Positions 10,616 through 36,437 are shown, counted from the first letter of the stretch. The stretch: DNA of 64,000 bases from Tubulanus polymorphus (GCF_964204645.1 NC_134032.1:15922275-15986274); one strand, 5' to 3'. Made by a program: numbers and translations. The notes: generated by a model from the sequence alone, not told the origin.

Positions 10616-13600
10616 ATGTCTCGACGATCTCACAGCTCGGAGCGAGATGCGAAACAGTCGCCGCGGTTGACGCGGCAACGTCAAACCTCTGAAACCCGCA
10701 CGACTCGATCGGGGAAAATTATACAAAATGGCGGCAAAAAAAGGTCAGTCGAAATCTTAACAAATCAAATTGCCGTATTGTAATTAGTGAAATAATTGAG
10801 AACTTGAAACGCGTCCTAAAAACAAATACGTTCCCTAAAAACAGAATTCATTCGTTAATTTGTAGTGAATCGGTTACCATTAGCAACGCGGGTCGACATC
10901 ACAGGACGAAGAGTTCTCCAGTGGAGAAAATAAAACCAACGGAAAAAACGTCTCCGGGGTTACAGAGTTCACGGACTCCGGGTTCTCGAACTCGGAGTAA
11001 AACCGAGGAATCAACTCCGGTCGTCGTAACAACGCGAGGTCGATCTAATATAACTAATAAAAGTTCAACTGTAACCGCGGCAACAGCTGCCGGAGCAGCC
11101 GAGAAGATAACATCTCGACGGGGAAGGTCTCGGCGGGATGCCGGGGATTCCCCTCGGGACGCTGGGGATTCCCGTCAGGACGCCGGGGATTCTTCAGATA
11201 ACCTAAAAAACACTGGGGAATCCTCTGATAACCCTCAGGATACCAGGGATTCTCCTGATGCACCACAAAACACTAGTGACTCCCCTGATACAGGGGATCC
11301 CCCTGATACTCCGCAGACCGCTGGAGATCCCCCTCGTACCGTGCAGGATCCCCCTGATATGTTACGTGAATCACCTCGTGCCGCGGGGTCCGAGCAGACG
11401 ATCACCGGACCGAGGAAAGCCGGCCGTCCTAGAAAACAAGTTAAACGGGAACCACAGAGTCCAAGCCCGGCTGTGAGCAGTGTGCCGGGTAGCACACGCC
11501 CGGCTGTGAGCAGTGTGCCGGGTAGCACACGTCCGGCTGTAAGTAGTGTGCCGGGTAGCACACGCCCGGCTGTGAGCAGTGTGCCGGGTAGCACACGTCC
11601 GGCTGTAAGTAGTGTGCCGGGTAGCACACGGCCAGCTGTAAGTAGTGTGCCGGGTAGCACACGCCCGGCTGTGAGCAGTGTGCCGGGTAGCACACGGCCG
11701 GCTGTAAGTAGTGTGCCGCGTAGCACACGCCCGGTGCGCACACGTACTCCTAAACGAGATAACGATTTCGAATGGGAGGACCTGTCTCCGCGCGTCAGTA
11801 AACGAGTTGCTACGGCAACCGAACAGAAGACTCCGACTGCCGCTCAGCAGCAGCGTAAAAAACCGATAAAACACCAACAGAGTCCGCAACCGGGTGGCAG
11901 TGATTTAGTGTACGCCGATGACGAGGTCAGTTTCCGGATCAGTCCCGTCTCTCAGCAACCGGTTGTAAAATCGGAAACGGTCGCTACGGCGACAACTGCT
12001 TCGATTGTGCTCGATAATTCAGCTTTATCGCTACCAGAAACGAGTGAATTTGAAAACATCGTCGACAGCGGTGATTTAGAAGATGTCATCGTTCCCGCGC
12101 ATACTGCCGACGAATTCTGGACTCCAGTTACCACGGATACGCAGATACCGACGTCCGTCAACGACGAAGAAATGGAAGTAGATGAATCGTCACCGACGGC
12201 AACCACGATAAAATCGCAGAAAAAAAGGCGTTTTACGACTCCAGTTAAAACATGGAGTTTACGTCGGAGAACATCGGACGAGCAGCAGACGACAGCAGCT
12301 GCAGACGCAGGGATACACCTGCAGCAGACGACAGCAGCTGCAGACGCAGATGCTGGGATACACCTGCAACAGACGGATTTATCAGAGTATTCAGTGAATA
12401 CCTCTCCACAGCAGGCGGATACCTCTCCACAGCAGGCGGATACCTCTCCACAGCAGGTGGATACCTCTCAACAGCAGGTGGATACCTCTCAACAGCAGGC
12501 AGATACCTCTCAGATTGATATTAAAATGGAATTTCTTCTTTCTGGTAAATATCAATAATGTGACCCCTTCTTTAATCTATTTATTGAATATTTTCAATTA
12601 ATAGAATTATCAAAGAGATCGATATTTGTCGCTCGGAAAGATCTGAGAATTGCGTCGAAATCTCACGTAAATTATTTCGTTTTGCAGATGATAAAACGCC
12701 ACCTGGTGAAAACTCGGTGGTCATGGTTAAACGAGAGGTTTCAGATTCAGATTTTCATCCCGATCTCATAAAAGCGTTTGAGGTTTGTGTTAATTTAATC
12801 CCCTCCACTCCCCTTATACCCACCCCCTATACCCACCCCCTCTACTCCCCTCTCCCTCTCGCTGTCTCTCCCCCTATATCTGAGTTACCAACTGTTCCTG
12901 ATTTTCAGTGTTTGTTACTCTTTTATAATGAGAAATACTGATTAGATTAGATTGATGGGTACAGAAATATGAAAGATTTTATTGAGGGTCTTACTGTTGA
13001 TTACTGATTAATTTGAACAGAAATATGAAAGATTTTATTGAGGGTCTTACTGTTGATTACTGATTAATTTGAACAGAAATATGAAAGATGTTATTGAGGG
13101 TCTTACTGTTGATTACTGATTAATTTGAACAGAAATATGAAACATGTTACTGAGGGTCTTACTGTTGATTACTGATTAATTTGAACAGAAATAAGAAAGA
13201 TGTTACTGAGGGTCTTACTGTTGATTACTGATTAATTTGAACAGAAATATGAAAGATGTTACTGAGGGTCTTACTGTTGATTACTGATTAATTTGAACAG
13301 AAATATGAAAGATTTTATTGAGGGTCTTACTGTTGATTACGGATTAATTTGAACAGAAATATGAAAGATGTTACTGAGGGTCTTACTGTTGATTACTGAT
13401 TAATTTGAACATTTTCTTTCATATTTTAATGAAATAGTACTGAAAAAAATTCAATTAGTTACTGATAGCACTATTCAGAGTTTGGCAGCCCTGCTATATT
13501 CATATTAAACTGATTTGATTAATATGATATTTTTAGGATCAGTTGTCGACTGTGAAGGTATTGTTCTGTAATATGTGTTCAGTGAAGCCTCTATCGAGCG

Positions 13601-16600
13601 TCTCTTACGCTAAAACACATTATTTACAAGTTCATCCCGATGAGTGTCGCCGAGCGCCAGATCCGTCATTTCCATCACAACTTGAACTAGACTCGATACC
13701 AGCGCGACTCATTGATTGTTGGTCGGTAAGTCATCACCTAGCAACAATCACAGTTCGTATTGATGGATCAGGGTGAATCTTATCTTCAAATCCAGACATT
13801 TTCAATTGCTGTTCCTGTTGGGTTCGGTTTCACAAAAAAAGTTAATCTCAAATTTTTGGTGTAATCGCCATTGGTTACTTCATGTTTACAATGAGGACAA
13901 CAATTCAAACTTAACCGTTTTAGGCTCAAACTTTTTCGTGAAACTGGGCCCTGGTGATGAGTGACGCAAGGAACCTCTTGATAAGAAACAGCCCTCACTG
14001 AGGATATCTTATAATTTAATCAGGGAATTTGAATTTTTGGTGTCTTGTTGTTCTTGCTGGTGACGAGTGACACGAGGAACCTCTTGATAAGAAACAGCCC
14101 TCACTGAGGATATCTTATAATTGAATCAGGGAATTTGAATTTTTGGTGTCTTGTTGTTCCTGCTGGTGACACAAGGTACCTCTTGATAACAAACAGCCCT
14201 CACTGAGGGTATCTTATAATTTAATCAGGGAATTTGAATTTTCGGTTGTTCTTGCTGGTGACGAGTGACACGAGGAACCTCTTGTAAAGAAACAGCCCTC
14301 ACCGAGGATATCTTATAATTTGCTGAGTGAACGTGAATTGAATTGTTTGATTGTTTGATTTAGGAGATGTACAATGATAAATCTGGTAATATAGCATTAC
14401 CCAAAATGCACTGTCCATTGTGTCCGTTAACCACTCGTAATTTAGAATGTCTACGCCATCATTACGTTATCTGTCGTCGTGGTAACAGCAGTATGACCGA
14501 TGACGAAGTTATTGATTGTTTGAGTCAACCATCCATACCTGCAGACGTGTTGAACAAGTGGATCGTAAGTAAAGACACACGGGCACACGCCCAGCAGTGT
14601 GCGTGCTACTAGGGCACATGCCCAGCAGTGTGCGCGCCACTAGGGTGCATGCCAGCAGTGCGCGCTACTAGGGTACACGCCCAGCAGTGTGCGCACCTAT
14701 CATTCTTATCAGTCTATCTTATCTCTTCAGTCAATAAATGATATTCATTCACTGAAATGATTATTGAATTTTAGGAATCATTCAAACAGAAGAATTTGGC
14801 GTATTGCCCGAAATGTCGTTCGGCACGGCGACAAATGCAGTCGTTAAAATCTCATTACGTGTCTTGTTCGGCGAGAACGAAGCAAACAAAACAGCAGCAA
14901 CAGCAGACGCCGGTCTCAGTCGAGGAGCAGACGGCCTCAACAGAGGAGCAGACGGCCTCAGCTGAGCTGCAGTTAACCTCACTGGTACAGTGGCTCCATC
15001 TACCTCTACTTTTTCAATTTTATCGTTTTCAAAAGTTTAAAATTCTGATTTACAGTATTATACCCTTTCTATTCATACAATAGGACGATCCGTCTGTCGC
15101 TGCCATGAAAATGGAAGAACCGATGGATACGACCTTGACCCACGAGGTATGTCGTCATCGGTAACAGTTTGATTGTTGTCCATTCTAGTCGAAATTTGTG
15201 TAAATTTTTAGAGTGAAAGATGATTTGCATTTTTTTCAGGAGAATGTTTTGGTCGAAGATTCGGAACTACCAGACGCTTTGCATAATCACATAAAGGTAA
15301 GTGCAGATATGGGTCGCCCTCCGTACCAGAAATGGGTTGCGCTCGGTACCAGAAATGGGTTGCTCTCAGTACCAGAAATGGGTCACCCTCGGTACCAGAA
15401 ATGGGTTGCCCTCGGTACCTGAAACAATTGTCGCCCTCTGACGCAGAAACCTAATCAGGGTTTCCAGCGGTCCTTCCAAGTCTTTCTTAGTCCTTATTTT
15501 GGAAAAAGTTTGGACAAACATCTTTGTTCTTCTTTTTGACTCTAAGTCCTTCCTTTTGATAAAAAAAAAGTCCTTCAAAATTTGATTTTTATGTATTTTC
15601 ACATACATTTTCATGCAGATTTGTTGTGAATTCGACTGTTGAAGTATTTTCTTACTCAGACCTGGTAATTCAATTATCAGTAAGATTGAATATACAGGAA
15701 AGTGTTATGGAATTACCCTGAAATATATGACTGGTCTATATGACTAGTATTCTAGTAGAGGCATTGCGAAAATGCTCCCTTATGGGCCCTCATTATACTG
15801 GAAATAACTTCTTTCTGAGTCTCCTTTTGGGTCTAAAATTGCCGAAAAAGTCCTTCTTAGTACTTGTTTTTACTCTGGCCTTACCACTGGAAACCCTGGC
15901 CTAATGCACCTCGAAATCATTGATAATATTTCAGACATTGTCTACGACTGACGACAGTTTACAGTGCCCCCTGTGTACGACTATCGTAACTACACCGGTA
16001 GAATTGAAATATCACTACATCGAGAGTCACATGGTGGTTCGAGAACAGACTATACCTCTGAGTATCGTACAGGAATGGAAGGTATTTATTATTCCACCAC
16101 CAGGAGTCGCCTCCGTCCGCACAGAAAAATAGATCATATTTCCGTCGATTTCAATTCCAGGACCAGTTGAAAGAGGGCGCTGCGATGGTGTGTCCGTTTT
16201 GTAAAGAGAATCGTCACAATTTGAAAGTGATCGCGCTTCACTTCATAGCGTGCCGTAAACTACAAATATCCGCTATTCCGGACTCATTGCTGGCTGCGTG
16301 GCAGCAACCGGTTAATAGTGATATCCGGTGTCCGTTATGTTCTCGAGTCCGGCGTGGAATTGAATCGATGAAATCACATTACGTGCTGTGTAAAGTGCGT
16401 CGTCATGACGATGCCGTTGAACCTGATACAGGTAATTAATGATAAACGATTCATTCAGTTGAACTCGCTCTAAACTGCTGCCGATTCAACTTGAAAATTT
16501 CTTTCGTTTCAGTGATATCTCTACCTTCCGATACGGCTGCCATGACGACTGTCACTACGGCGTCGACGTCGAATCCGGTAAAGGTAGTTAGAGCGGACTC

Positions 16601-19600
16601 GATTCCGGCTGCCAGTCCGTCGACCTCTGCCGGTCGAGCGCAGCAAACAGTGCCCGCTGTAGTGATACCCATCCCACCGGTCGGTTCTACGATCGTGCTG
16701 CCATCTATTATCCAACAGCAGCAGCAACAGACCGTGTGCGCTTTAACTAAACTAGGTTTAAGCGGTAGTGGTAATCAAGCGATGGTTGAACTAGGTTTAA
16801 GTCAGGATGATGATAATTCGGATGATGAAGATGCTGACGCTATTGAAATAGATATATCTGATAGTATACGTGCTACATGGCTGGTGAGTGTAACCCCCGT
16901 ACACAGCCCTACACTACCCAGTACAGCCCCACACTGACCCATACAGCCCCACACTGCCCAGTACAGCCCCACACTGCCCCATACAGCCCCACACTGCCCA
17001 GTACAGCCCCACACTGACCAGTACAACCCCACACTGACCTGTACAGCCCCACACTGCTTCGTAAGCCCCACACTGACCCATACAGCCCCACACTGACCCG
17101 TAAAGCCCCACACTGCCCCGTACACAGCCCCACACTGCCCAGTACAGCCCCACACTGACCCATACAGCCCCACACTGATCCATACTGCCTCGTATAGCCA
17201 CACAGAGTCCATTACCTGGTATACATGCTACATTGCTCATAATTGTTCCTGACAACTCCAAACAGTCCTTCATTCCCGCACGGCCCCATAAATCCCAAAG
17301 GGTCAGTTTTATGTAAAAATATTTCAAACAAATTGTTGATTCTATGGTTTTAGCAACATCAAAAGGAGAAAGGTTCGATGCGATGTCCGATTTGTTACTC
17401 GAAACGCTCGGTAATGTCAACAATGGAAACTCATTATCGCGAGTGTTTCCGTAAAGGGGGCGTTGTTCGCAAATCACCTCAAAAACGTTACATTCGTGAC
17501 CCTAATAGTCGTCGCACGGTTACCGCGACGACCGCTACTCCGGCGTCTGTTGCTGTAGTAACGCAGTCAGCTGTTACCACGGATACACAATTGAGAGGTA
17601 ACAATCGTCGTTAGAAATTTTGATGTTTAAAATAACGACATGCGTTGCGTCTATTTTATGATTTGAGTTTGATTGTTACAGGTAAGAAGTCGACGGAGCC
17701 GCCCCAGTTAATGGAGCCACCCCAGCTGATGGAGCCGCCCCAGCTGATATTCGATGAGTTTGAGACGGAGAGTATCGTCAGCGATTGCACCGACCTGACG
17801 ACCGCGACTCAGGACAGCGAAACCTCGATAGAAACTCCTTCTCGTCGTCGTGGGCGACCGCCGAAAAAACGTAAACTAACATCAGCGGCGCCACCTGCGC
17901 AACGAGACACGCCTGGGCGGGATTATAACGATATATCGGAGATATCGCCGGACGATCTGAAAAACTGGAAGGTACGTTAACTTTCAACTAGAGCGGTTTG
18001 AATAATGAGGTAACCGTAGTGATAAGCGATTGTTGAATTTATTTACAGATACAACTAAAAACAAACGGATCAGCGAAATGTCCGTTATGTGGAGTTCATA
18101 GAAAACATATTGATAGCATTATCAACCATTATAATCACTGTATAGAGGTAATTTACTATACCATACATCTCACTCTGTCCTCCCGTCACCTCTCCTCACC
18201 TCTCTCCTCACCTCTCCTCACCTCACCTCTCCTCACCTCTCTCCTCACCTCTCTGTCCTCCCATGACCTTTCTCTCCTCTCCTGACTCCTCACTCCTCTC
18301 CTGACCTCTCTCCTCTCCTGATCTCTCTTTCCTCTCTTGACCTCTCTCCCGGCCCCTCTCTCCTGACCCCTCCTGGCCCCTCTCTCCTGACCTCTCTCCT
18401 CCTGACCTCTCTCCTCTCCTGACCTCTCTCCCGTCCTCTCTTGACCTCTCTCCCGGCCCCTCTCTCCTGACCTCTCTCCTCTCTTGACCTCTCCTCTCTT
18501 GACCTCTCTCCTCTCCTGACCTCTCTCCCGGCCCCTCTCCTCTCCTGACCTCTCTCTTCTCGTGACCTCTCTCCTCTCCTGACCTCTCTCCTGACCTCTC
18601 TTTCTCCTGACCTCTCTCTCCTCTCTGGTGACCTCTCCTTCATCTACACGATGTATTGTTATAATTTCAGACTGATTATACGTGTAAATTGTGCAACTCT
18701 GAATTCAAAACTTTGCCGTCATTAAAATTCCACTTCATGTCTGTTCATTCCGCCCTGGTAAGTGAGTCTGTCAGCAGGTTTAACCCCCCCCCCCCCGCCC
18801 CCTAGCGGAGGGTGTGAGTTGATAATCTGGTTGTACATATATTTCAGTGGAGTATGGATGTACCGGAAGGTTTAAAAGATGACTCGTCGTTAAGGGTTGT
18901 CATGCAGAAAGTCGGTCGTCTGCTTTGTCCGCGTTGTAACCGAGAAATTAGGACTTACTTCCAGTCGTATAAATACCACGTAGAATGGTGTGGTAGAGAG
19001 GTTAGTATCCTGTCTGTCTGTCTGTGTCTGTCTGTCTCCGCTGACTGTCCGTCTGTCTGTCTGTCTGTCTTTCTGTCTGACTGTCTGTCTTTCTGTCTGT
19101 CTGTTTGTCTGACTGTCTGTCTGACTGTCTGTCTCGGTTCACTGTCTGTCTGTCTGTCTGTCTGACTGTCTGTCTCAGTTCACTGTCTGTCTGTCTGTCT
19201 GACTGACTGTCTGGCTGTCTGTCTGTCTGTCTGTCTCGGTTGACTGTCTGTCTGTCTGTCTCCGCTGACTGTCTGTCTGTCTGTCAGTCTCGGTTCACTG
19301 TCTGTCTGTCTGTCTCGGTTCACTGTCTGTCTGTCAGTCTCGGTTGACTGTCTGTCTGTTTGCCTGTCTGTCTCCGCTGACTGTCTGTCTGTCTCGGTTC
19401 ACTGTCTGTCTGTCTGTCTGTCTGTCTGTCTCAGTTGACTGTCTGTCTGTTTGTCTGTCAGTCTCAGTTGACTGTCTGTCTATCTGTCTGTTTGTCTGAG
19501 CTAGGCCAACCGGAATGCTCTCAAATCGGGTTGAAATAGACATAAGGTGCATTCTTGTTATCGCGGATGATTTAAACTACCTTTTCACATTATATTCATT

Positions 19601-25600: not shown

Positions 25601-28600
25601 AGGATGGTTCTATAAATAGACTCGGTTTACTCGCTGTTGGATGTCATGAAGGTCACATTAATATCTACAGGTAACTATTCGGGTTTTCTGTTACCGATTG
25701 ACTGACTGGGGGGATTCCCCAGACAACTGCGTGCCTTACTCTACTCGCATTTCCAATAAATGACTTTTGCTGAGAGTTGTCTCATGAAAACAGATTTTGC
25801 ACAAAGATAAAATTAGTTGTTCAGTGGCAGCTAAAACATCCACTGACATCTAGGGATAGAGAATCAACTGGCCCGACTAGAATTCCTCGGAGCCAGCAGC
25901 CAGCAGCCAAATCACTGATTTATGTCGATGTATTTGTAGCATTCCTCATCTGTCGTCTGTTGAGTCTGAATCTGATCTGTCCATTCATCACGTTACACCG
26001 AAACTGAAACTCACGCACTGGCAAAAACAAAAACAGGGTAAGACAACAATTAAACTGTCACATGATATCTCGACCTAGTAACGGCTTTATCACAATTCAT
26101 AAAAAAAACTGAATTATTCATTTCACAGGTGGTGCTAGTTGCACGTGTTTAGATTGGTCGCGTAGCAACGGTCATAAAACCATCGCCGCCGGTTACAACA
26201 ACGGAGTCGTCTGCACGTGGGATTTAACGTCGAGATCGCCGTTGCTAACGACGACCGATCCGGAGTTGACGATGTATCCTCATCGCGCGTTCCAGGCTCA
26301 TCTGCTCGCCGTGGAGAAACTGTCGTTCTGTTTACAGCAGGACTCTCATTTCGCGACGTGTTCCGGTGATCATTTCATACGAGTCTGGGACATGAATAAC
26401 GTTACCACGGCGATGGAAGCTACGAGAATGACGTATCAATCGGATATTAAATGGTGCGGTAACGGCAGTTCGTACATAGCAACCACTAATCAGGATTGTT
26501 ACAGGTACGTGTTACCAGTACCAGTTATTCCACTAGATGGCGTGCTGCCCCATCAATAACTAACTATTCCATTCTGACAACTAATCACGGCAACATTCCT
26601 AAAAATGTAATTGAGTTATTTAGAATAGAACGATGATTTATACTTAACATTAATGAGTTACGAGTGAAAGTGAAAGATTGTCGTTGATTACAGATTTCAC
26701 AGAGATAATTCTATTTGATGTATTTATTACAGTTACAATAACGATAGGCTGATTGTATTTGATGTATTTATTACAGTTACAGACAGTAATGATAGGCTGA
26801 TTGTATTTGATGTATCTATTACAGTTACGGTTCGACTTGTTTGTCGTTATCGACAGTAGGAGACGAGTCTCTAGTGAGCGCTAATCGTAGACGTGTCACC
26901 AGTCATAAAGCATCCATATGGGTACGTACATTACCTCCGTTACCTCCGTTACCTCTATCCTTTAAATCTCATCCGTTACCTCTATCCTTTAAATCTCATC
27001 CGTTACCTCCGTTACCTCTATCCTTTAAATCTCATCTGTTACCTCCGTTACCTCCGTTACCTCTATCCTTTATATCTCGTACGTTACCTCCGTTACCTCT
27101 ATCCTTTAAATCTCATCTGTTACCTCTATCCTTTAAATCTCATCCGTTACCTCCGTTACCTCTATCCTTTAAATCTCGTACGTTACCTCCGTTACCTCTA
27201 TCCTTTAAATCTCATCCGTTACCTCTATCCTTTAAATCTCATCCGTTACCTCCGTTACCTCTATCCTTTAAATCTCATCCGTTACCTCTGTTACCTCTAT
27301 CCTTTAAATCTCATCCGTTACCTCCGTTACCTCTATCCTTTATATCTCATCCGTTACCTCCGTTACCTCTATCCTTTATATCTCATCCGTTACCTCCGTT
27401 ACCTCTATCCTTTAAATCTCATCCGTTACCTCCGTTACCTCTATCCTTTAAATCTCATCCGTTACCTCTGTTACCTCTATCCTTTATATCTCATCCGTTA
27501 CCTCCGTTACCTCTATCCTTTATATCTCATCCGTTACCTCCGTTACCTCTATCCTTTATATCTCATCCGTTACCTCCGTTACCTCTATCCTTTATATCTC
27601 ATCCGTTACCTCCGTTACCTCTATCCTTTAAATCTCATCCGTTACCTCCGTTACCTCTATCCTTTATATCTCATCCGTTACCTCCGTTACCTCTATCCTT
27701 TATATCTCATCCGTTACCTCCGTTACCTCTATCCTTTAAATCTCATCCGTTACCTCCGTTACCTCTATCCTTTATATCTCATCCGTTACCTCCGTTACCT
27801 CTATCCTTATTAAATCTCTTCCTCATTTTGTATTGTCAGTGTCAAAGTTATTCCTCGGTTAACGATAACTTTTTGTTTCGATGAAGAAAAAAGACCAAAA
27901 GACGTGTAACCGTAGTAACGTGTATTTATTGTATTTCTAACAGTGTTTGTCTCAATCTGATTGGTTGAATATGGGAGTAAGCGGCGATACGGTCGGTGAA
28001 GTGATCGGACGATCTCTCGTTATTCCGTCGAGTTGGGAGAAAATGATGCCTCGAATTCGTTACGTGAGTTCTTACTTTTAAATTTGAAAATTCAACTCCC
28101 TCGATTGTTGATCCGCGTTTAACCGCTGAAAGATTTCTGGATGGGTTTTCGCTGCGTGTTTCGGACGTATGACCTTGGCCCTAGAAAAAGTAAAAAAAAA
28201 AACTAGCTTAGGAAATCTGAGTAGCCACTAGAAAAATCTAGAAAATATTGAGAATTTGAGAAATTTTTGTAAAAATTTGGAAAACTCATGGAATTCATTG
28301 CTTTGATGCGTGAAATGAAAGAAACGTTAAACAGGTTTAACCCTTTCAGTGCTGACTAATTAATACCCTATAGTGCTGGGCCCAGTTTCACGAAGAAGTT
28401 TAAGCCTTAAACGGTTAAGTTTGAATTGTTGTCCTCATTGAAAACATAGATAATTTGAAAATTTTTAGAAATTCCACCGTAGTTTGTTGAATAACGGGAA
28501 TACCATTATAATGCGTCTACACTGCGGCGCGGTGTATCGTTAGTTACTAGTATTTCACTATGTTTGACAGGTGCTGCCATCTTTCAATAGAGATAAAAAC

Positions 28601-29316
28601 TAATTACCAATTACATCAATACACCACAATGCGGTGTACTAGCGAAATCTATCACTGATTTATACACCGCACTGCGGTGTAGACGCACTGAAAGGGTTAA
28701 AGAGTTCGATTAAAAAGTCGGATTATTGATTATATTCCAGTGGATCGTCCGGTTTTTAGTGGAGCAGAAAAATGCCGCTCCGAACGACATCTTCGAAATG
28801 ATCAAACCGAAGGAAGGCGGTCCGGTTGGGGGAGGTAAGAAATCAGGTCGCGGACGTCCGGCTAAACCGGTACGCCCGCGTGGACGTCCGCCGAAACGTC
28901 GTCGAGGCGGAGGGACATCCGGTGGCGGCGGTGGGAGTGCTCCGACAGAGCAGCCCGACGAACACGAAGCGAAAAACGAAGTCGAACTGGAAATGATTCG
29001 TCAACGACAACTGAAAAACGTCGGTATTTTGATGGACGAGATTTTACACTTTTCGAACCGCGATAGATTGGACGATATAATCGCCGAGATGGAGGAACGT
29101 GAGGATATGAAACATCGTCAGAGGCTGGCCGCCGCGAAACTACGAGACGTTCTCATTGACTTTCACGATCTACAGGAACAACGCATGAAACAACGATCGG
29201 AGATAGCAGGCACTGGCGAGCGAGTAGTAGCGCCGGCAGGTGGCGCCGGCGGTGACACATTCGCCAAGAATATGAACGATCTACTTACGACTAAACAACA
29301 ATTCCTGACTCAGCAT

Positions 29317-29349
<33 letters not shown>

Positions 29350-32300
29350 CACGACGCCCATGACAACGGCTCGATCGATGACATCATAGACAGTGTTGTA
29401 TTTCAGTCGTCGGAGGGAAATTTAGACACGAGTTTCATCGAATCGTTCATGAACGACGAACTCTCTGAGCTACCGGCGCCACCTACACTACCCGCTACCG
29501 TTAACAACGCTCCCGTCGCCGTGGTTATAGACAACAATAATCACGAGAATAAACCGGTAGTCAAGGAAACGGCGGTAGCGTTAACGCAGGAAGTCGTAGC
29601 GCGACACGATTTAAACAGGTATCACCCGCACGCCGTAACCGTGGTAACCAGTACCGTTAACACGCGACCGTCGTCGGCTCCGAGTCTCATGCTAGCTCGT
29701 TACATCGACACGCAGAACACGGCGCCATCTATACCGGTCTCGGTTACTGACGAGAAAACGTTACGTAAAACAACTCAGCAGCAGCAGCCCGATAACGGAC
29801 TGGTTAAACGACCAGCGCAGAACAAGCGGCGCCACCACGAGGCGGAATTCAGCGATAACGAGACGACGAAGTCGAGTCGTCGGAGTTCGTTAAACGCGAT
29901 CCTCACCGAGGTGATGGATCAAACCGATCACGAGTGTTCCAAGTTCGAGGGTTACGAATCGTCGAAACTCTATCTGGACGAGATGATCGAAACGGCGCTT
30001 CATTCGTCGCGACGTCGTGTCAACTCGGAGCGCGACGTCGTACGCGAACGTGTCAACGTGTCGACGATGAGCGACGCCGAACTGTCGTCGTTAACCCGTG
30101 ATTTAACGCGTCACCTCGACGACGATACGATCAATCAGGTCGTCAAGTGGAACGTCGATCAGATATTCCGTAAATGCGGTTACGATCGGAGGCCGAAACG
30201 ACTGAGACAACGCAACAATAACTCGAATCTACGAGCTAATGTTCGCATGAAGAATTCACTCATCAAAAAAAGTCTAAGGTTTTTCCGTGAAGTGACAACG
30301 CACCAGCAGCACCAGCAGCGTCAGACAGTTGAGCACCAGAAGCAGCAACAGCGACAGACAGACGCGCAGTTGACACAACTCCAGCAGCAGCAGATGAAAA
30401 AACAAAAAACAACAATCAATAACGTCAAAACAGACCAGCAGACTGTCGTCATGACGACTAATTGTTATTCGAACGACGGCGTAATTTTATACGGAGACTC
30501 ATCAGCGCCATCTATTATGAAGAATAGTCCGACATCGCGTAAATGTGAGAGTTCAAATGAAATTGAAAAGGCTGTTGAGATGAGCGAGAAAGAGGGGACA
30601 CCACAGCTGGAGCAGTCCTCACAGATGGAGCAGTCCTCACAACTGGAGCAGTCCTCACCGATGGTTAACGGAGGTCAAACATCTCCGCTGGATTTATCCG
30701 TACTCCACGTCGAAAATAACACCGACCAAACAGTGGATATCACTAAAACACAGTACGCCGCGCTGGATGGAACGGTGGATATCACTAAAACACCTTACGC
30801 CGCGCTAGATGGAACGGTGGATATCACTAAAACACCTTACGCTACGCTCGTCGCGCATTTAACGTCCGGAGTTGATTTAGATTCGGTCGCTACGGATGGG
30901 AAATTACCGAACAACGTCGTCATGGCTACGCAACAGAAGAACGACGATACGTTGTGTTTGATGAAGAAAGAAGACGATTGCGGATTAGATTTATACGAGA
31001 TTAAACCGTTATCGGCGTCATGTGACCCGGTTCAACGCGACTTACTACCGAATCTAAACGTACTGGCAGCAGTCGCCACGGGAACGGCTGTATCCAACGC
31101 AACAATGAACGTTATACCCGGTTATAACGTGGTGGCGCTACCGTCGACTCCGGTCGTCGGGGCGATAACGATCAGTAGTGTTGAGACTAATAACTCGACG
31201 ACCGCGGCGACGTATACGATATCAGCTCTTCCGAATACGGGTTCGTCGGTTACCGGGGGTGATAGCGGTATTCCAAAACGACCTCAAACTATCGAAATAA
31301 TACCCTCCGCGCAATCTCAATATCACGTTCAAAATATCGCCAAACAGGAGCAGTTTGATTTATTGAAATCGGAGGAACGCTTACCTTCACTGCCTCCGCT
31401 CCAGAAAGTGGTTAGTACTCCGGAGTACGAGATGTACGGTACCCACCCTGCGGAGGTAGTTACTCCAGCGCTCCAGAGTACTCCGGAATATGAAGTATAT
31501 GGTACTCACGCTGTTCCTCCAGCGCTCCAGAAAGCCAGTACTCCAGAGTATGAAGTATATGGTACTCACGCTGTTCCTCCAGCGCTCCAGAAAGCCAGTA
31601 CTCCGGAGTATGAAGTATATAGTACTCAGGCTGTTCCTCCAGCGCTCCAGAAAGCCAGTACTCCGGAATATGAAGTTTATGGTACTCAGGCTGCACCTCC
31701 AGCGCTCCAGAAAGCCAGTACTCCGGAGTATGAAGTTTTCGGCACTCACGCTCCGAGACTCATTGAACTGCAGCCCGGAATGAAACCTACTGCGGCAAGT
31801 TATGTACTACACGACATGTCGACATTAAACAGTCTTTCGTCGGAACTATCGTCAGTCGCTAGTACGCCTATAGATGGCAGCAGTAGTACAACGGCTTCCG
31901 ATACGTTATTATTCAACAACGACGTATCCGCGGTAACGAATAACGAGTATATGTCGTCGTTAGGTTCGTATTTAACGGATGTAATTCAAGTGACGATGAA
32001 ACAGAAAGAAACGATCGATAATTTAACGGCACGAACGACGAACGCGTTCGATAATCACATGCCTGAATACATGGAACTGTGTCGCCGTAACGACGAATTA
32101 AATTCGACGTTCGAGGACGATAAACACGTTCCGGAAATCCCGTCGTCGTCGTCGTCGAGGGCGACAAAGTGGATGAATTTCGACGGAGTAGTTTCGGACG
32201 TCGTTGCGGCGGCCGTCGCTCGTAACGACGAGAAAATATTCGAGAGAGTTTTACGCAAACGATGGCATCGTGAAAACTGGATGAAATATAACCGTAAAAC

Positions 32301-35300
32301 CGGACTGGAACCGGTCGCAGTCGGACCCGACTCGCGACCGGTCGGACCAGTCGGCGGACCGGAGTCGGCGAGTTGCGAGTCTTGTCGCGCGGTCGAAGCT
32401 GCGAGGCACTACGATAAACTAGCGTGGGACACGGTTTATCTCGTCAAGTGCGAAAACCGTTCTAAAACTATCGAGGATATACCGAGCGGAGTTCGATATT
32501 TCGCGCGTCGATTGAAACGCTCGAAATCGGTCGAGAATATCCACATGCGTTGGGTCGGTATGACCGATAAATGTTCGCGGTGTCAGAACGGCGGAAAACC
32601 GGTCGCCGTCGTCACGCGTCCCGACAACGCATCGCAATTAAAACCGTGGTCGACGCTCGATCACGTGTTAAACAGCGTCGTCTGTAACCCGGAGAAAGCT
32701 ATCAAAAATCTACCGGAGAATCGCGTAAAGCGCCACCTGGAGGCGGTTCTACAACGCGTTATAAAGGACGATAGTTTAACGGTGAATATGGCGGAGATTA
32801 ATCGCGATCTCAAAGGTGATCCGTTAATGATTGAATTCCACCGCGAACGTCGTCTTAAACGTAAACTGCGTAAACAAAAACAGACAGTAAAACGACTTCA
32901 ACAACAACAATCGGTCGTTACCGCGCCAACGGCGACCGCTCAACGACGATACCCGACGCAGGATTACGACGTGTTTATGAATTCGGCGTGCGTCGCCACG
33001 ACGACCGAGCACGGTTTCCGTCTGCCGAGCGTCGCCGAATTATTGCAACCGATGGCGACGATTCAATCACAAAACAATCAGGGTTCGTTACCCCCGATAT
33101 CGGCGCTGAGGAGTTCGTTAGAGAGTTCACCGGACCACCAGGGGGCGCTACCTCCGCCGGTCGTGTATTCACCCGGTTACTACGGTAACTGGTACGGATA
33201 TGATCACTCGCCGCATTCGGCTCTTCTCTCGCCGTCCGACCTCGTGACCTCGACCTCTGCTCCGTTACCGACTACCGTTCTCGATATGACGGACGTCGTC
33301 ACGGCGCCAACGCAACAATCCGAGCAGACGGATTTAACGTTGAAACGTAAACGATCGCCGAACGAAGAATTGGCTCCGATATCGGACGTGATGAGAAACT
33401 GTTACAGCGTTCCGTCTGTCGATCAGATCGTCATCGGTGACAATAAAACACGCCACAACAATAACAACAACAACATGGCCGCCGCCGCCGGGGTTCGTGG
33501 GAAAATTCCATCAACAGTGCCATCTGTGTCTACACAACACATTAATTATACCCCGGAGCCAGCAGCAGCAGCAGCAGCAGCAGCGGTAAACGTGAACCAG
33601 GAATACACGGATTATCCCGTTACCACGACAACTGGAGGAGGATATTCGAGTGTTGCCACGACGACCGGAGGTGGTTATTCTAGCGTTGATCACGTGTTAG
33701 GTAACGATAGCTGGACTCAGAGCGCGATCGCGGCCATCGCGGAATCTCAATCTAATCTGCATTTACTCGCTGAATTAATGGACATGCATCATCAACACGA
33801 GTTAAAACAACAGCAACGTCAGGAGACAGCAGCAGCTGCAGCTGCAGCAGCAGCAGGTGCAATCCATCAAAACAGCAGCAGCAGCAGCAACAATCACCAA
33901 CAATCACTCTCCACGCCAAACCAGTTCAACTCGGCTACAGTCACAGTGCTGCCATCTATTGATCAAATACAGCAATCTGTTATTCCAGTTGCACCAGCTA
34001 CCACTGCACCAGCTACGTCTGCACCAGCTATGAGTGCACCAGCTGCACCAGTGAGTCATAGAGCCACGAATAAAACCATGCCGCCTAAAGGTAACAAGGG
34101 TAAGGTCAAGGTCGTTGCGAAAAAACGCGCCCCGCGTAATTCTTCATCCGTAACCGCGACGACGAAAGGAAAATCGAGTAAAAAGACGATGGCGAGCTCT
34201 ACGGGTGTTGCCGTGACGACAACGCCGAATAATACCATTCAAACGAATCTCGGCGCGATCGTTTGTCCAGACGCGCCAGTAGAGGGCGCCACCGCTGTCG
34301 ATAACGGAGATATACAAGTTTTATGTTTGGAAGAATGCGGGGAAGAGAATTACGCGACGCTCGTATCGATAGACGAGGAGTTCAATGAGACGGAGAATCG
34401 AGTTCGTGTAGATATACCGATTCAACAATCAGCGCCATCTACGTCTAAACAATCAACAGCAGTTTACACAAGTAACGCGGATCTGGAGAAAGTATTCGCT
34501 GATGTTCGTAACGATTGTTTGAAATGGGCGGAAGAACGAGATCGTGTTAATTCGGTACAAACTGCGTCTGCCGAGAACATCGGTACCGTCGTCGAACAAC
34601 AGGTGGCAGCACCTGATGGTGAAGAGGTGGACGACGAGGAGGAGGAGGATATGAAACCGCTGTACGATAGCGATGATGAAATAGTTTGTCACGGATTGTT
34701 GGAATATCATCGAAAAATCATCGATTTATCTCAAACTGACGACGATGCAGAGAATGTTGTCAAGGTCGATGTGGAGAATGTCATCAAGGTCGATGCGGAG
34801 AACGTCAGCAAGTTCGATGCGAAGAATGTCAGCAAGGTCGATGCGGAGAAAGTCAGCAAGGTCGATGCGAAGAACGTCAGCAAGGTCGACGTGGAGAAAG
34901 TCAGCAAGGTCGACGCGGAGAATATCAGCAAGGTCGACGCAGAAAATGTTGTCAAGGTCAATGCGGAGAATGACGTGAAATCCCAGTCCCTGAAGACAAC
35001 CTTGACGGTTCAGCCAAAGGTCATCGCTATGGAGATCGATGGTAACAATAGTAAACCGAATCCTGGTGATGGTGGTGATGCCGATGGTGAACAAAATAAT
35101 GGTGGTTGTGGTGGTGGTGATGGCGATGCGCCATCTGGTGGCATTCAGGAATCAACGCCGCCTGGTGGTAGCGATGGTAAACAACCAGCAGACGATGGAA
35201 AAACTGATGAAAAGACGAATTCAGAATTAAACGATGAGTTCAACATGGTGTTACAGGAATTTGATTTGGTAAGTTTTCAATCCTGCTGCCTCCTCTCACT

Positions 35301-36437
35301 GCCTACCTCTCTCTCACTGCCTCCCTCTCCCCCTCACTCTCTCCCTCTCCCTCTCCCTCCCTCTCTCCATCTCCCTCTCCCTCACTCCCTCTCCTTTCCT
35401 CATTCTCTCCCTTCTCTCCCTCTCCCTCACTCCCTCTCTCCCTCACTCCCTCTCCTTTCCTCATTCTCTCTCTCCCCTCTCTCCCTCTCCTTTCCTCATT
35501 CTCTCTCTCCCCTCTCTCCATCTCCCTCTCCCTCACTCCCTCTCCTTTCCTCACTCCCTCTCCCCCTCACTCTCTCCCTCTCCCCCTCACTCTCCCTCCC
35601 TCTCTCCATCTCCCTCTCCCTCACTCCCTCTCCTTTCCTCATTCTCTCTCTCCCCTCTCTCCATCTCCCTCTCCCTCACTCCCTCTCCTTTCCTCATTCT
35701 CTCTCTCCCTCACTCTCTCACACTGTATTTCAATGTTGCCAGTAATAGACAGTAATGTTGATATGTTTGTAGAAGGATATAGTTTCTGATTCGAGATTGA
35801 GTATGATGTCAGATCTACGCAGTTCACAGGTTGACCACACTCCGATTACTTCAGTTACACAGGTACGACGTCAGTTAAACAGTTCCAAACTTCTGTCCAA
35901 ACCCGCACTGTAGATTTGTAGAAAGAGTTTATTTTCTAACAGTTTCTGAACAGGCTCTGAAGATGAGGTTTAGAATTAACCTAGAAAGAAATTAAACCTA
36001 GTTAGAATTAACCAAGTTAGAAAATAAACTTCAATTTCTACAAATCTACTGCGGGTTTTACTTTCTATACTGATATTTATATCAGTTCACGACAGTCAGT
36101 TTCAAACGTCAGTTCATCGAAAGATTTATTCAGAATTCAGAATTTTCAGTTTTAAACTATAAATTATTTTAAACTATAAATTATTAATTCAGTCGGTTCG
36201 ATGTATTCATTAATTGTTGCGTGTTGCTATCGGCGACGCATCGCCCTCATGAATTAAACGACGACGATTGTTGTTTTGTAGTTATGTTGGAATCCGAACT
36301 ACAGCTCGTACACGTGGTTACTAGTGACCAGTCACTCGGGTATCGCTACGATACACTGTCTGTCGGGACTCGCGGCAACAATCGACGAGCGCAACGCTAC
36401 GACAACAGACGGCGCCGCTGCATCAACTACGACGTGA
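10616..36437 (+). CDS. GTF3C2: Fused ZNF512/ZNF512B-like zinc-finger + TFIIIC subunit 2 (GTF3C2/TFIIIC110-like) WD40 protein, ~31 coding exons, ~4,400 aa
   Basis: Phase-compatible GT-AG exon chain from ATG 10616 to TGA 36437. Finger region 13537-23897 (e.g. WKIQLKTNGSAKCPLC..HYNHC..YTCKLC..LKFHFMSVH; GRLLCPRC..YKYHVEWCG; FRCKKCKKETTSELGMRYHVTTNH). WD region: YLPVAKFSPQF, FFVGGPVWASDWCPTP, IWTLKWCPSGCW, RLGLLAVGC, HKASIWCLSQSDWLNMGVSGDTVGEV. Last exon 36282-36437 reads LCWNPNYSSYTWLLVTSHSGIATIH. Confidence 0.85.
11466..11733 (+). repeat. Coding 33-bp repeat (PAVSSVPGSTR x8)
   Basis: In frame within exon 10866-12544. Confidence 0.9.
12961..13411. repeat. 56-bp intronic tandem repeat, ~8 copies
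   Basis: acagaaatatgaaagat(t/g)tta(t/c)tgagggtcttactgttgattactgattaatttga. Confidence 0.93.
15456..15898. mobile_element. hAT-like MITE
   Basis: Termini cagggtttccagcgg / ccactggaaaccctg. Flanks acctaat / gcctaat resemble an imperfect TSD. Confidence 0.55.
16895..19500. repeat. Three separate intronic simple repeats: 21-bp tacagccccacactg.. (16895-17180), CT-rich (18170-18640), TCTG-rich (19010-19500)
   Basis: Direct inspection. Each starts just after a splice donor. Confidence 0.9.
20325..20735. repeat. 53-57-bp tandem repeat containing ctagggttagggttt, ~7 copies
   Basis: gtgacctagggttagggtttgattggctggctagagtcatgatgtcactggtggtca. Confidence 0.92.
21970..23783 (+). repeat. 95-bp tandem array (19 acceptor copies) made of an intron 3' end plus the first 45 nt of a coding exon
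   Basis: Unit ..gttgtttgtttacag|GGCTGTGGTAAGACACAGATAAGCGTACAGGCCGCTATCTATCAC-tccccc.. First exon-start copy is at 22025. Only the last copy (23739) continues into the coding exon. Confidence 0.95.
26922..27810. repeat. 36-bp intronic minisatellite starting at the splice donor
   Basis: ccgttacctccgttacctctatccttta(a/t)atctcat. Generates the spurious ORFs 26841-27884 and 26893-27813. Confidence 0.95.
28337..28700. mobile_element. piggyBac-like MITE (TTAA-flanked, CCC/GGG ends) carrying a nested fragment of the GGGCCC MITE family; truncated sister copy at ~4842-5110
   Basis: ttaa-ccctttcagtgc ... gcactgaaaggg-ttaa. Internal sequence is nearly identical to 4842-5110. The extra piece 28378-28447 matches the end of the 62294-62423 family. 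Confidence 0.75.
28741..35268 (+). other. Single giant coding exon (6,528 nt, 2,176 codons, phase 0-0), low-complexity/disordered, with N-terminal AT-hooks
   Basis: ttccag|TGG acceptor at 28741 and TTG|gtaagt donor at 35268, with a stop-free frame (ORF 28726-35745). Contains GRGRP/RGRPPKR, polyQ, polyA and internal 20-aa and 8-aa repeats. Confidence 0.85.
35898..36058 (+). mobile_element. Second Penelope-like remnant with a degenerate hammerhead core (35957-35988), in the last intron of the GTF3C2-like gene
   Basis: Inverted arms aaacccgcactgtagatttgtagaaa..ttattttctaac / gttagaaaataaa..tttctacaaatctactgcgggttt flank CTGAAGA-T-GAGGTT..AACCT-AGAAA. Confidence 0.4.

What the first reader, a model, noticed from the sequence alone, without database searches (positions are those of the whole stretch)
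10616..36437. ZNF512-type zinc-finger protein and TFIIIC110 (GTF3C2) encoded as one reading frame
Seen: exons 17682-23897 reproduce the ZNF512/ZNF512B layout (W..G.CPxC C2HC + C2H2 pairs, LRVVMQKVGRLLC, GRPKRRAARRAVESLQNL linker, final C..C..SELGMRYH finger). They splice in frame (phases 0,1,2,1 via 24099, 24383, 24741, 25021) into GTF3C2 sequence, with no stop or separate start exon visible. Established: in vertebrates these are separate genes and both map to human 2p23.3. ZNF512/512B target pericentric repeats and are linked to SUV39H/NuRD, while TFIIIC binds B-boxes and acts as a chromatin barrier. Inference: this may be an ancestral composite gene later split in vertebrates, or a lineage-specific fusion. 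Either way it tethers a repeat-reading finger array to the Pol III/insulator complex. This is the best candidate for an undescribed system in the window.
Basis: partly seen in the sequence, partly recalled or inferred. Interest (0 to 1): 0.88.

Follow-up and report, generated by a model that had tools for sequence, protein, structure and literature searches.

The report
TFIIIC110 gene carrying a ZNF512 finger arm
In this ribbon worm, as in sponges, sea anemones and most invertebrates sampled, one gene encodes both a ZNF512-type zinc-finger array and the Pol III factor TFIIIC110, so the vertebrate genes ZNF512/ZNF512B and GTF3C2 look like the two halves of an old gene that was split.

Summary
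Canonical GT..AG introns join the finger exons (about 17.7-23.9 kb) in frame to GTF3C2 exons (24.1-36.4 kb). One spliced contig of an RNA-like run crosses the key joint 23897|24099, with only 30 nt on its 3' side. No in-frame ATG lies in exons 24099-25316. Both halves are single copy in the 268-Mb genome, which is Tubulanus polymorphus.

The GTF3C2 half matches human TFIIIC110 (E 3e-11 and 4e-14). A vertebrate ZNF512/512B profile hits the finger exons collinearly (best E 2e-6).

The fusion is not specific to this lineage. The same finger-acidic linker-WD40 order occurs in predicted proteins of a sponge, a sea anemone, an annelid, an octopod, arthropods, echinoderms, a hemichordate and amphioxus, and in an uninterrupted 1519-aa ORF on a transcript-sized contig. 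Vertebrate ZNF512/512B, lamprey included, stand alone. In stickleback znf512 lies 3.2 kb upstream of gtf3c2.

The best reading is an ancestral metazoan composite gene that split in vertebrates. No paper found describes this, and one calls ZNF512B vertebrate-specific. The function of the finger arm is inferred only.

The parts
10616..12544 (+). Putative N-terminal low-complexity exon(s) with an AT-hook (core at 11422).
   Evidence: Open frame only. There is no RNA or homology support, so membership in the gene is unverified.
13537..17596 (+). Upstream extra finger exons: seven C2HC or C2H2 fingers at about 13537, 14364, 14775, 15905, 16161, 16299 and 17354.
   Evidence: Finger motifs were read. 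All map to the same C2HC/C2H2 unit of the ZNF512 profiles (E 1e-5 to 1). Pfam ZNF512_C2HC gives 18 bits at 16167-16436, below the cut-off. The exons are not linked to the gene by RNA.
17668..17971 (+). Exon with an AT-hook (RGRPPKKRK) and the Trp lead-in of finger pair 1. The 5' boundary is uncertain.
   Evidence: The donor AAG|GTACGT is in phase 0.
18049..18147 (+). C2HC finger of pair 1.
   Evidence: Invertebrate composite profile E 1e-7. Vertebrate ZNF512 profile positions 355-388.
18671..18757 (+). C2H2 finger of pair 1.
   Evidence: E 7e-8 and 3e-4. PDB 2gqj (ZNF512B) and 2ctd (ZNF512) are among the top five hits.
18848..19000 (+). C2HC finger of pair 2 (LRVVMQKVGRLLC...).
   Evidence: E 2e-9 and 1e-3. 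2ctd is the second PDB hit.
21473..21666 (+). C2H2 finger of pair 2 plus the basic GRPKRRAAR motif.
   Evidence: E 1e-4. The same motif is present in amphioxus, crinoid, sea star and sea anemone proteins.
21754..21925 (+). Linker (AVESLQNL...) and the first half of the C2HC finger of pair 3 (..ECQFE).
   Evidence: Phase 2 acceptor and a 6/6 donor. The 5' loose end of X2 contig 9 reads this exon's end.
21974..23784 (+). Intronic tandem array of 19 copies of a 95-bp unit. Each copy repeats the acceptor and the first codons of the next exon.
   Evidence: (97% matches). The RNA contig lies on the last copy only.
23739..23897 (+). Second half of the C2HC finger of pair 3 and the last C2H2 finger. 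This is the last ZNF512-type exon.
   Evidence: E 2e-6 against the vertebrate ZNF512/512B profile and 3.5e-10 against the invertebrate profile. X2 contig 9 covers it. It is single copy in the genome.
23898..24098 (+). The 201-nt intron at the junction of the two halves.
   Evidence: GT..AG. One X2 contig skips it, at depth 14.4 with 30 nt on the 3' side. It holds no AATAAA or ATTAAA. It does hold the only ATG (24083) that could start a separate GTF3C2.
24099..24210 (+). Acidic linker exon.
   Evidence: An acidic stretch follows the last finger in all composite orthologues inspected.
24383..24632 (+). Basic, Trp-rich pre-propeller exon.
   Evidence: Frame and phase were checked. The match to the GTF3C2 profile is weak (E 0.3). 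The 3' joint 24632|24741 is seen in X2.
24741..24856 (+). Pre-propeller exon (..NYLPVAKFSP..).
   Evidence: X2 joints on both sides. Profile E 0.015 and 5e-4.
25021..25316 (+). First GTF3C2-specific propeller exon (FFVGGPVW..WCP).
   Evidence: Human GTF3C2 8cli_C residues 403-509, E 3e-11, the only PDB hit. Profile E 8e-30. Single copy. X2 joints.
25603..25670 (+). Small propeller exon.
   Evidence: X2 joint 25316|25603. Profile E 4e-5.
25940..26037 (+). Propeller exon.
   Evidence: X2 joint 26037|26129. Phases were checked.
26129..26504 (+). WD40 exon.
   Evidence: Human GTF3C2 residues 570-692, E 4e-14. Profile E 2e-37. Single copy.
26825..26921 (+). Propeller exon.
   Evidence: X2 contig 13, whose loose end reads the start of exon 27944. 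Phases were checked.
27944..28063 (+). Propeller exon.
   Evidence: Profile E 9e-4. X2 loose end.
28741..35268 (+). Giant exon of 6528 nt (2176 aa), phase 0 in and out. It is low-complexity, carries AT-hooks, and sits inside the propeller-coding part.
   Evidence: No Pfam family. The only database hit is the species' own RefSeq model LOC141909648, which covers 31432-35268.
35773..35862 (+). Small exon.
   Evidence: Used by the RefSeq model P0310. The profile match is weak.
36282..36437 (+). Last exon, holding the GTF3C2 C-terminal blade (..CWNPN..) and the stop codon.
   Evidence: Profile E 2e-8. tblastn hits from many GTF3C2 orthologues. Used by the RefSeq model.

Best explanation
The locus is the single Tubulanus polymorphus gene for TFIIIC110 (GTF3C2), a subunit of the tauB module of the RNA polymerase III factor TFIIIC. 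It is in the composite form that I infer to be ancestral for animals.

One reading frame encodes, in order:
- a low-complexity N-terminus with AT-hooks;
- ZNF512-type pairs of C2HC and C2H2 zinc fingers (three core pairs, plus extra upstream fingers that may be lineage-specific);
- an acidic linker;
- the GTF3C2 pre-propeller segments and WD40 propeller, here interrupted by a 2176-aa exon.

Vertebrates carry the two halves as separate genes (ZNF512/ZNF512B and GTF3C2). This is best explained by fission of the ancestral gene.

Shown here: the in-frame exon chain, RNA-like contigs across most joints including the junction of the two halves, single-copy status, homology of each half, the wide distribution of the composite form, and znf512-gtf3c2 adjacency in a teleost.

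[quoted passage not shown] The flexibly tethered finger and AT-hook arm would give TFIIIC a second DNA or chromatin contact. By analogy with vertebrate ZNF512/512B, it might also recruit SUV39H or NuRD-type silencing factors.
For: - Splice chain and phases.
- RNA-like run X2 covers exons only and shows joints 23897|24099, 24632|24741, 24856|25021, 25316|25603 and 26037|26129.
- There is no in-frame ATG in exons 24099-25316, and no poly(A) signal in the 201-nt junction intron.
- GTF3C2 half. ZNF512 half: five collinear hits of a vertebrate ZNF512/512B profile.
- A single profile built from nine invertebrate composite proteins hits both halves of the window in order.
- Both halves are single copy in the genome.
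- Composite orthologues: 34 of 150 GTF3C2 representatives match the ZNF512 profile at E<=1e-3, and more show the same finger spacing.
- Named taxa include Sycon, Actinia, Owenia, Argonauta, krill, millipede, scorpion, beetles, ants, sawfly, whitefly, mosquito, damselfly, crinoids, a sea star, Ptychodera and Branchiostoma.
- Pfam ZNF512 models pass their cut-offs in amphioxus and Ptychodera.
- The amphioxus finger region hits only ZNF512B and ZNF512 in the whole PDB.
- A 5399-nt Logan contig holds one uninterrupted 1519-aa composite ORF.
- Vertebrate ZNF512/512B, lamprey included, lack WD40 families.
- In stickleback, znf512 is followed by gtf3c2 3.2 kb downstream on the same strand.
- The sea anemone has an intron at the same place as the window, two to three residues after the last finger histidine.
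Against: - The RNA contig has only 30 nt beyond the key joint, one short of the tool's own bridging rule.
- X2 is not on record as RNA; I judge it so from its splicing pattern.
- No laid contig covers 24129-24587, so no single RNA molecule is shown to run from fingers to propeller.
- An ATG at 24083 inside the junction intron could start a GTF3C2-only product.
- The window's finger exons stay below Pfam's ZNF512 cut-offs (18 bits against 27). Generic fingers elsewhere in the window score about E 3e-4 against the invertebrate profile.
- Most composite orthologues are automatic gene models. A predictor can merge neighbouring genes, and the Chanos chanos model probably shows this.
- About 90 positions of the GTF3C2 profile (463-556) were not found in the window.
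- RefSeq annotates only a 1360-aa 3' part of the locus.
- Function was not tested at all.
Confidence: 0.85

Rival explanations
1. There are two neighbouring genes. A ZNF512-like gene ends at or just after 23897, for instance by intron retention with a stop at 24000, or in the acidic exon with a stop at 24222. GTF3C2 starts from its own promoter near 24.0 kb at the ATG at 24083. The observed joint would then be an occasional read-through (conjoined) transcript.
For: - An in-frame ATG at 24083 precedes the acceptor.
- The RNA contig carries only 30 nt past the joint, and X2 shows a hole at 24129-24587.
- Gene predictors do merge znf512 and gtf3c2 where they are neighbours, as the Chanos chanos model shows.
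Against: - There is no poly(A) signal in the 201-nt intron.
- No X2 contig was laid on the intron. The depth of the bin 24024-24131 is fully accounted for by the 30 spliced letters.
- The gap between the two genes would be under 100 bp, in a genome with kilobase-sized introns.
- The acidic stretch follows the last finger inside one protein in every composite orthologue inspected.
- Uninterrupted composite ORFs sit on transcript-sized contigs.
Confidence: 0.08
2. The fingers are ordinary C2H2/C2HC fingers with no specific relation to ZNF512/ZNF512B. The resemblance reflects the general finger fold.
For: - Single exons score below Pfam's ZNF512 cut-offs, and a genome-wide scan with PF21276 finds nothing.
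- For exon 18671-18757 the top PDB hit is DPF2, not ZNF512.
- Unrelated fingers at 50.7 and 52.8 kb reach E 3e-4 against the invertebrate profile.
Against: - Five hits to a vertebrate ZNF512/512B profile run in the same order along both the profile and the genome, best E 2e-6. Unrelated fingers in the window score E 0.3 or worse.
- Orthologues that align collinearly with the window score 240-256 bits against that profile.
- Those orthologues pass Pfam's ZNF512 models and hit only ZNF512B and ZNF512 in the PDB.
- The C2HC-then-C2H2 pairing matches the published ZNF512B layout (PMC11602157).
Confidence: 0.04
3. The fusion is real but arose several times independently, or in nemerteans alone. The separate vertebrate state would then be ancestral.
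For: Fusion of neighbouring genes is common. Many of the 150 GTF3C2 representatives lack detectable fingers, though several of those are fragments or vertebrate proteins.
Against: - The same order, the same basic motif between pairs 2 and 3, and the same acidic linker occur in sponge, cnidarian, protostome and deuterostome proteins.
- The intron after the last finger is shared with a sea anemone.
- Only vertebrates show stand-alone ZNF512 genes.
Confidence: 0.03

Closest known systems
Human TFIIIC110 / GTF3C2 (PDB 8cli chain C). From my own knowledge, the yeast counterparts are tau91/Tfc6 and S. pombe Sfc6.
   Same: Both have the WD40 propeller with the family-specific first blade (FFxGGPxW..WCP), the pre-propeller segments and the C-terminal blade. 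The gene is single copy. [quoted passage not shown]
   Different: The human protein (911-925 aa) has no zinc fingers. The window's gene adds a ZNF512-type finger arm in front and a 2176-aa exon inside the propeller-coding part. About 90 profile positions were not found.
Vertebrate ZNF512 and ZNF512B
   Same: Both have pairs of an atypical C2HC finger followed by a C2H2 finger (PMC11602157). The window gives collinear profile matches, and the basic motif between pairs is shared. The literature reports that ZNF512/512B bind pericentric satellite repeats and recruit SUV39H (statement in PMC13537249), and that ZNF512B binds NuRD through RBBP4.
   Different: The vertebrate proteins stand alone and have no WD40 domain. 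The window's fingers are divergent (below Pfam cut-offs), the array has extra upstream fingers, and it continues into GTF3C2. DNA specificity and partners are unknown here.
Composite GTF3C2 gene models of other non-vertebrate animals, such as Branchiostoma lanceolatum CAH1248446.1, Ptychodera flava XP_070533169.1, Anneissia japonica XP_033100681.1, Owenia fusiformis CAH1793672.1, Actinia tenebrosa XP_031550880.1 and Sycon ciliatum XP_065190309.1.
   Same: They share the order fingers, basic motif, last finger pair, acidic linker, pre-propeller, WD40 propeller, and they align collinearly with the window. These are the true orthologues.
   Different: They are 1050-1725 aa long and lack the 2176-aa exon and the seven extra upstream fingers. 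Identity to the window is only 25-45%. Most are labelled 'uncharacterized protein', and I found no paper describing the architecture.
Chanos chanos 'general transcription factor 3C polypeptide 2', XP_030628070.1 (1519 aa)
   Same: It is one model with ZNF512 in front (about 75% identical to human ZNF512 over the region covered by 2ctd) and GTF3C2 behind.
   Different: It is the only composite among the 120 listed vertebrate hits. It is probably a merged prediction of two neighbouring genes, which are separate in stickleback.

Membership tests
TFIIIC110 / GTF3C2 (tau91, Tfc6, Sfc6) | Family-specific first propeller blade and WD40 repeats with best match to GTF3C2 | tested here: met
   human GTF3C2 is the best or only PDB hit; profile E 8e-30 and 2e-37.
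TFIIIC110 / GTF3C2 (tau91, Tfc6, Sfc6) | Complete propeller through to the C-terminal blade | tested here: inconclusive
   The C-terminal exon was found (E 2e-8), but profile positions 463-556 were not detected and a 2176-aa exon lies in between. A fold of the joined protein was not attempted, because the joined step was left out.
TFIIIC110 / GTF3C2 (tau91, Tfc6, Sfc6) | Sole orthologue in the genome | tested here: met
   Two propeller exons each match one place in the 268-Mb assembly.
TFIIIC110 / GTF3C2 (tau91, Tfc6, Sfc6) | Assembly into tauB with TFIIIC90 and TFIIIC220, and a role in Pol III transcription | not testable with these tools
   Known for the human complex (PMC11811891). This needs biochemistry.
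ZNF512 / ZNF512B | Pairs of an atypical C2HC finger followed by a C2H2 finger | tested here: met
   Three pairs at 18049-23897 with all zinc ligands present. The layout is as described in PMC11602157.
ZNF512 / ZNF512B | Match to Pfam PF21276 (ZNF512_C2HC) or PF21367 at the curated cut-off | tested here: not met
   The best score is 18.0 bits against a cut-off of 27, and there is no genome-wide hit. The models score exons one at a time. The orthologues from amphioxus (30.9 bits) and Ptychodera (39.3 and 27.5 bits) do pass.
ZNF512 / ZNF512B | Specific, collinear similarity to vertebrate ZNF512/512B over the whole finger region | tested here: met
   Five ordered hits to a profile built from ten vertebrate sequences, best E 2e-6. 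Other fingers in the window score E 0.3 or worse.
ZNF512 / ZNF512B | Stand-alone finger protein that binds satellite DNA and recruits SUV39H or NuRD | tested here: not met
   The protein is not stand-alone, since the frame continues into GTF3C2. Binding activities are not testable here. One iNIM-like RKxxxPxK string at 11413 may be chance.

The most novel reading that the evidence does not exclude
The ZNF512-type finger arm is an original, built-in part of animal TFIIIC. It directs or anchors the complex at repeat or AT-rich DNA, such as extra-TFIIIC, boundary or heterochromatin sites. After the vertebrate gene fission, ZNF512 and ZNF512B would still act together with TFIIIC. A fusion in some species would then point to a partnership in others, linking the establishment of pericentric heterochromatin to the Pol III and insulator machinery.
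Probability: 0.3. Interest if true: 0.85.

Novelty: new variant of a known kind. Interest (0 to 1): 0.66.

Why it matters
TFIIIC110 and ZNF512/512B are studied as unrelated proteins, and a 2024 paper calls ZNF512B vertebrate-specific (PMC11602157). If the composite gene is ancestral, three things follow.

- ZNF512/512B have an origin and invertebrate counterparts.
- TFIIIC of most animals carries a sequence-reading arm that the human and yeast structures do not show.
- There is a concrete, testable link between TFIIIC, which is known for boundary and genome-organising roles, and the factors that seed pericentric heterochromatin.

For this genome, it also shows that the public annotation covers only a 1360-aa 3' fragment of a gene of roughly 4000 codons.

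Tried and rejected
- Pfam on single exons gave no ZNF512 hit above the cut-off.
- A genome-wide PF21276 scan found nothing.
- PDB searches with single finger exons were weak.
- The search for homologous proteins with the amphioxus finger region reached only amphioxus, because the word index limits its reach.
- Run X5, a guessed RNA run, held nothing of the stretch.
- X1 and X3 are unspliced, DNA-like runs and uninformative for splicing.
- tblastn of a vertebrate GTF3C2 on the cod locus found nothing, because only the 5' 3.5 kb of the downstream gene lies in the fetched stretch. Cod adjacency therefore rests only on that gene's length and WD40 families.
- The giant exon has no Pfam family and no homologue outside the species.
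- I considered a nested independent gene for the giant exon. I rejected it as the simplest reading because the exon is in phase 0 on both sides and the RefSeq model splices it to the GTF3C2 C-terminal exons.
- Not done: the exons were never joined into one protein for a search or a fold. All searches were made exon by exon, by reference. No structure or complex prediction was run.

Full report
**What is there**

The window is a eukaryotic locus with short exons, long introns and many intronic tandem repeats. It lies on contig C8 of a 268-Mb assembly. The only database protein identical to part of it is an NCBI model from the ribbon worm Tubulanus polymorphus.

**The GTF3C2 half**

- The open frame around 25021-25316 matches human GTF3C2 (8cli_C residues 403-509, E 3e-11) and nothing else in the PDB.
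- The frame around 26129-26504 matches residues 570-692 (E 4e-14), ahead of generic WD40 proteins.
- I built a profile from 42 GTF3C2 C-terminal halves. It hits the window in order at 24481, 24739, 25017 (E 8e-30), 25609, 25929, 26137 (E 2e-37), 27947 and 36285 (E 2e-8).
- Two of these exons occur once in the genome, so this is the only GTF3C2 gene.

**The finger half**

Between 13.5 and 23.9 kb lie exons with C2HC and C2H2 fingers. The core, 18049-23897, forms three C2HC-then-C2H2 pairs. This is the layout published for ZNF512B (PMC11602157).

Single exons are too short for Pfam. ZNF512_C2HC reaches only 18 bits against a cut-off of 27, and a genome-wide scan with it is blank.

A profile of ten vertebrate ZNF512/ZNF512B proteins gives five hits in the same order along profile and genome:

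| Window | Profile positions | E-value |
|---|---|---|
| 18046-18144 | 355-388 | 0.2 |
| 18671-18769 | 392-424 | 3e-4 |
| 18884-19006 | 436-477 | 1e-3 |
| 21533-21667 | 502-546 | 1.6 |
| 23736-23897 | 612-668 | 2e-6 |

Unrelated fingers elsewhere in the window score E 0.3 or worse. The upstream fingers (14.4-17.5 kb) all map to the same C2HC/C2H2 unit and look like extra copies.

**The junction of the two halves**

I read the sequence directly.

- The last finger exon ends at 23897 before GTGAGT, in phase 0.
- A 201-nt intron ends in TTGCAG, and an acidic exon runs 24099-24210.
- No in-frame ATG exists in these exons. The only candidate start for a separate GTF3C2 is an ATG at 24083 inside the intron.
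- The intron has no AATAAA or ATTAAA.
- The rest of the chain, worked out from splice sites and phases, stays in frame from about 17.7 kb to the stop at 36435-36437.

**RNA evidence**

One reads call was allowed (3231 letters).

- Run X2 covers exons only and shows GT..AG joints at 23897|24099, 24632|24741, 24856|25021, 25316|25603 and 26037|26129.
- The contig across the key joint is 813 nt long. Its 5' loose end reads the end of exon 21754-21925, so it links several finger exons to the acidic exon.
- That contig carries only 30 nt beyond the joint, one below the tool's bridging rule.
- No X2 contig was laid on 24129-24587, so joint 24210|24383 rests on frame and homology.
- X2 is not on record as RNA. 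I call it RNA-like from its pattern.
- X1 and X3 are unspliced, and X5 held nothing.

At the 3' end, the RefSeq model LOC141909648 (1360 aa) maps to 31432-35268, 35773-35862 and 36282-36434. This joins the giant exon to the GTF3C2 C-terminal exons. The model begins at an internal methionine, so the public annotation covers only a fragment.

**Is the fusion peculiar to this animal?**

No. I searched the first propeller exon against 1.84 billion representatives and got 178 hits. Many carry fingers 150-500 residues upstream of the propeller, with a repeated spacing. Thirty-four of the best 150 match the vertebrate ZNF512 profile at E<=1e-3. The strongest are:

| Organism | Bits against the ZNF512 profile |
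|---|---|
| Amphioxus | 242-256 |
| Ptychodera | 250 |
| Crinoids | 121-140 |
| Sea star | 137 |
| Sea anemone (Actinia tenebrosa) | 105 |

- Named sources also include an annelid, an octopod, krill, a millipede, a scorpion, beetles, ants, a sawfly, a whitefly, a mosquito, a damselfly and the sponge Sycon ciliatum. The sponge entry of the same length is also in a EukProt set.
- Pfam's ZNF512 models pass their cut-offs in amphioxus and Ptychodera. ZNF512_C2HC is the only family hit, below cut-off, in the sponge and annelid finger regions.
- The amphioxus finger region hits only ZNF512B (2gqj) and ZNF512 (2ctd) in the whole PDB.
- These proteins show the same order as the window: fingers, a basic GR.KRRAA-like motif, the last finger pair, an acidic stretch, pre-propeller segments, then the propeller.
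- One profile built across both halves of nine of them hits the window in order.
- A 5399-nt Logan contig carries one uninterrupted 1519-aa composite ORF. Ten near-identical members come from other contigs. The composite is therefore not only a product of gene prediction.
- The sea anemone gene has an intron two to three residues after the last finger histidine, as the window does.

**Vertebrates**

- Among the 120 listed relatives of fish Znf512 that are long enough to be composites, only the Chanos chanos model carries WD40 families. ZNF512 and ZNF512B from lamprey to mammals stand alone.
- In stickleback, znf512 is followed 3.2 kb downstream, on the same strand, by gtf3c2.
- Cod shows a 1001-aa WD40 gene in the same position, but I could not confirm it as gtf3c2.
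- In human the two genes lie in one 417-kb interval with ten genes between them (PMC2570409).

The simplest history is one ancestral animal gene that split in the vertebrate stem, with the halves first staying neighbours.

**How it probably works**

[quoted passage not shown] The finger and AT-hook arm is joined to it by acidic and basic low-complexity linkers. It most likely acts as a flexible second DNA or chromatin anchor.

Two things are untested: whether the arm reads repeats, and whether it recruits silencing factors as reported for vertebrate ZNF512/512B.

**Novelty**

Seven full-text searches found no paper linking ZNF512 with GTF3C2 or TFIIIC beyond co-listing at the GCKR locus. ZNF512B is described as vertebrate-specific.

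The composite models are public but mostly unnamed. I cannot exclude that orthology databases already show the relation. The scan's own notes hold nothing on it from other genomes.

All searches used single exons by reference. 

Noticed in passing
window 21974-23784: The intron before the last finger exon holds 19 tandem copies of a 95-bp unit (97% alike). Each copy repeats the polypyrimidine-AG acceptor and the first ~15 codons of the exon (GCGKTQISVQAAIYH). The RNA-like contig lies only on the last copy, with the exon starting at 23739.
   Followed up: partly
window 28741-35268: A 6528-nt (2176-aa) exon in phase 0 on both sides sits inside the propeller-coding part of GTF3C2. It is low-complexity with two AT-hooks and internal repeats. 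It has no Pfam family and no homologue outside the species. About 90 positions of the GTF3C2 profile are unaccounted for around it.
   Followed up: partly
window 31432-36434: The public RefSeq model LOC141909648 (1360 aa, 'uncharacterized protein') starts at an internal Met of the giant exon and ends with the GTF3C2 C-terminal exons. No protein of this species containing exon 25021-25316 appeared in the representative library, so the locus seems only partly annotated.
   Followed up: partly
window 11413-11436: The string RKAGRPRK fits the internal NuRD-interaction consensus RKxxxPxK described for ZNF512B and overlaps an AT-hook. The motif is short and sits in a basic, low-complexity exon, so chance is not excluded.
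   Followed up: no
L002 10001-24451 (stickleback) and L004 10001-33548 (cod): In teleosts znf512 is followed on the same strand by gtf3c2: 3.2 kb downstream in stickleback, confirmed by tblastn. In cod a 1001-aa WD40 gene lies 6.5 kb downstream, unconfirmed. The Chanos chanos RefSeq 'GTF3C2' of 1519 aa merges the two genes.
   Followed up: partly
window 13537-17596: Seven further C2HC/C2H2 fingers lie upstream of the three conserved pairs. All resemble the same unit of the ZNF512 profile, which suggests exon duplication in this lineage. Their inclusion in the mRNA is unverified.
   Followed up: no
window 18186-18639, 19010-19498, 26972-27822, 35289-35724: The introns carry long simple or short-period arrays: CT-rich 17-mers, a CTGT microsatellite of about 120 copies, and a 36-bp unit in 24 copies. 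Translated, they give long stop-free frames that mimic exons.
   Followed up: no
window 24177-24588 and 25544-25584: Contigs of X3 and a minor contig of X1 carry a shared set of base differences. This fits a second haplotype of the locus.
   Followed up: no
I used them only as in-window controls. They score E about 3e-4 against the invertebrate composite profile and E 0.3 or worse against the vertebrate ZNF512 profile.
   Followed up: no
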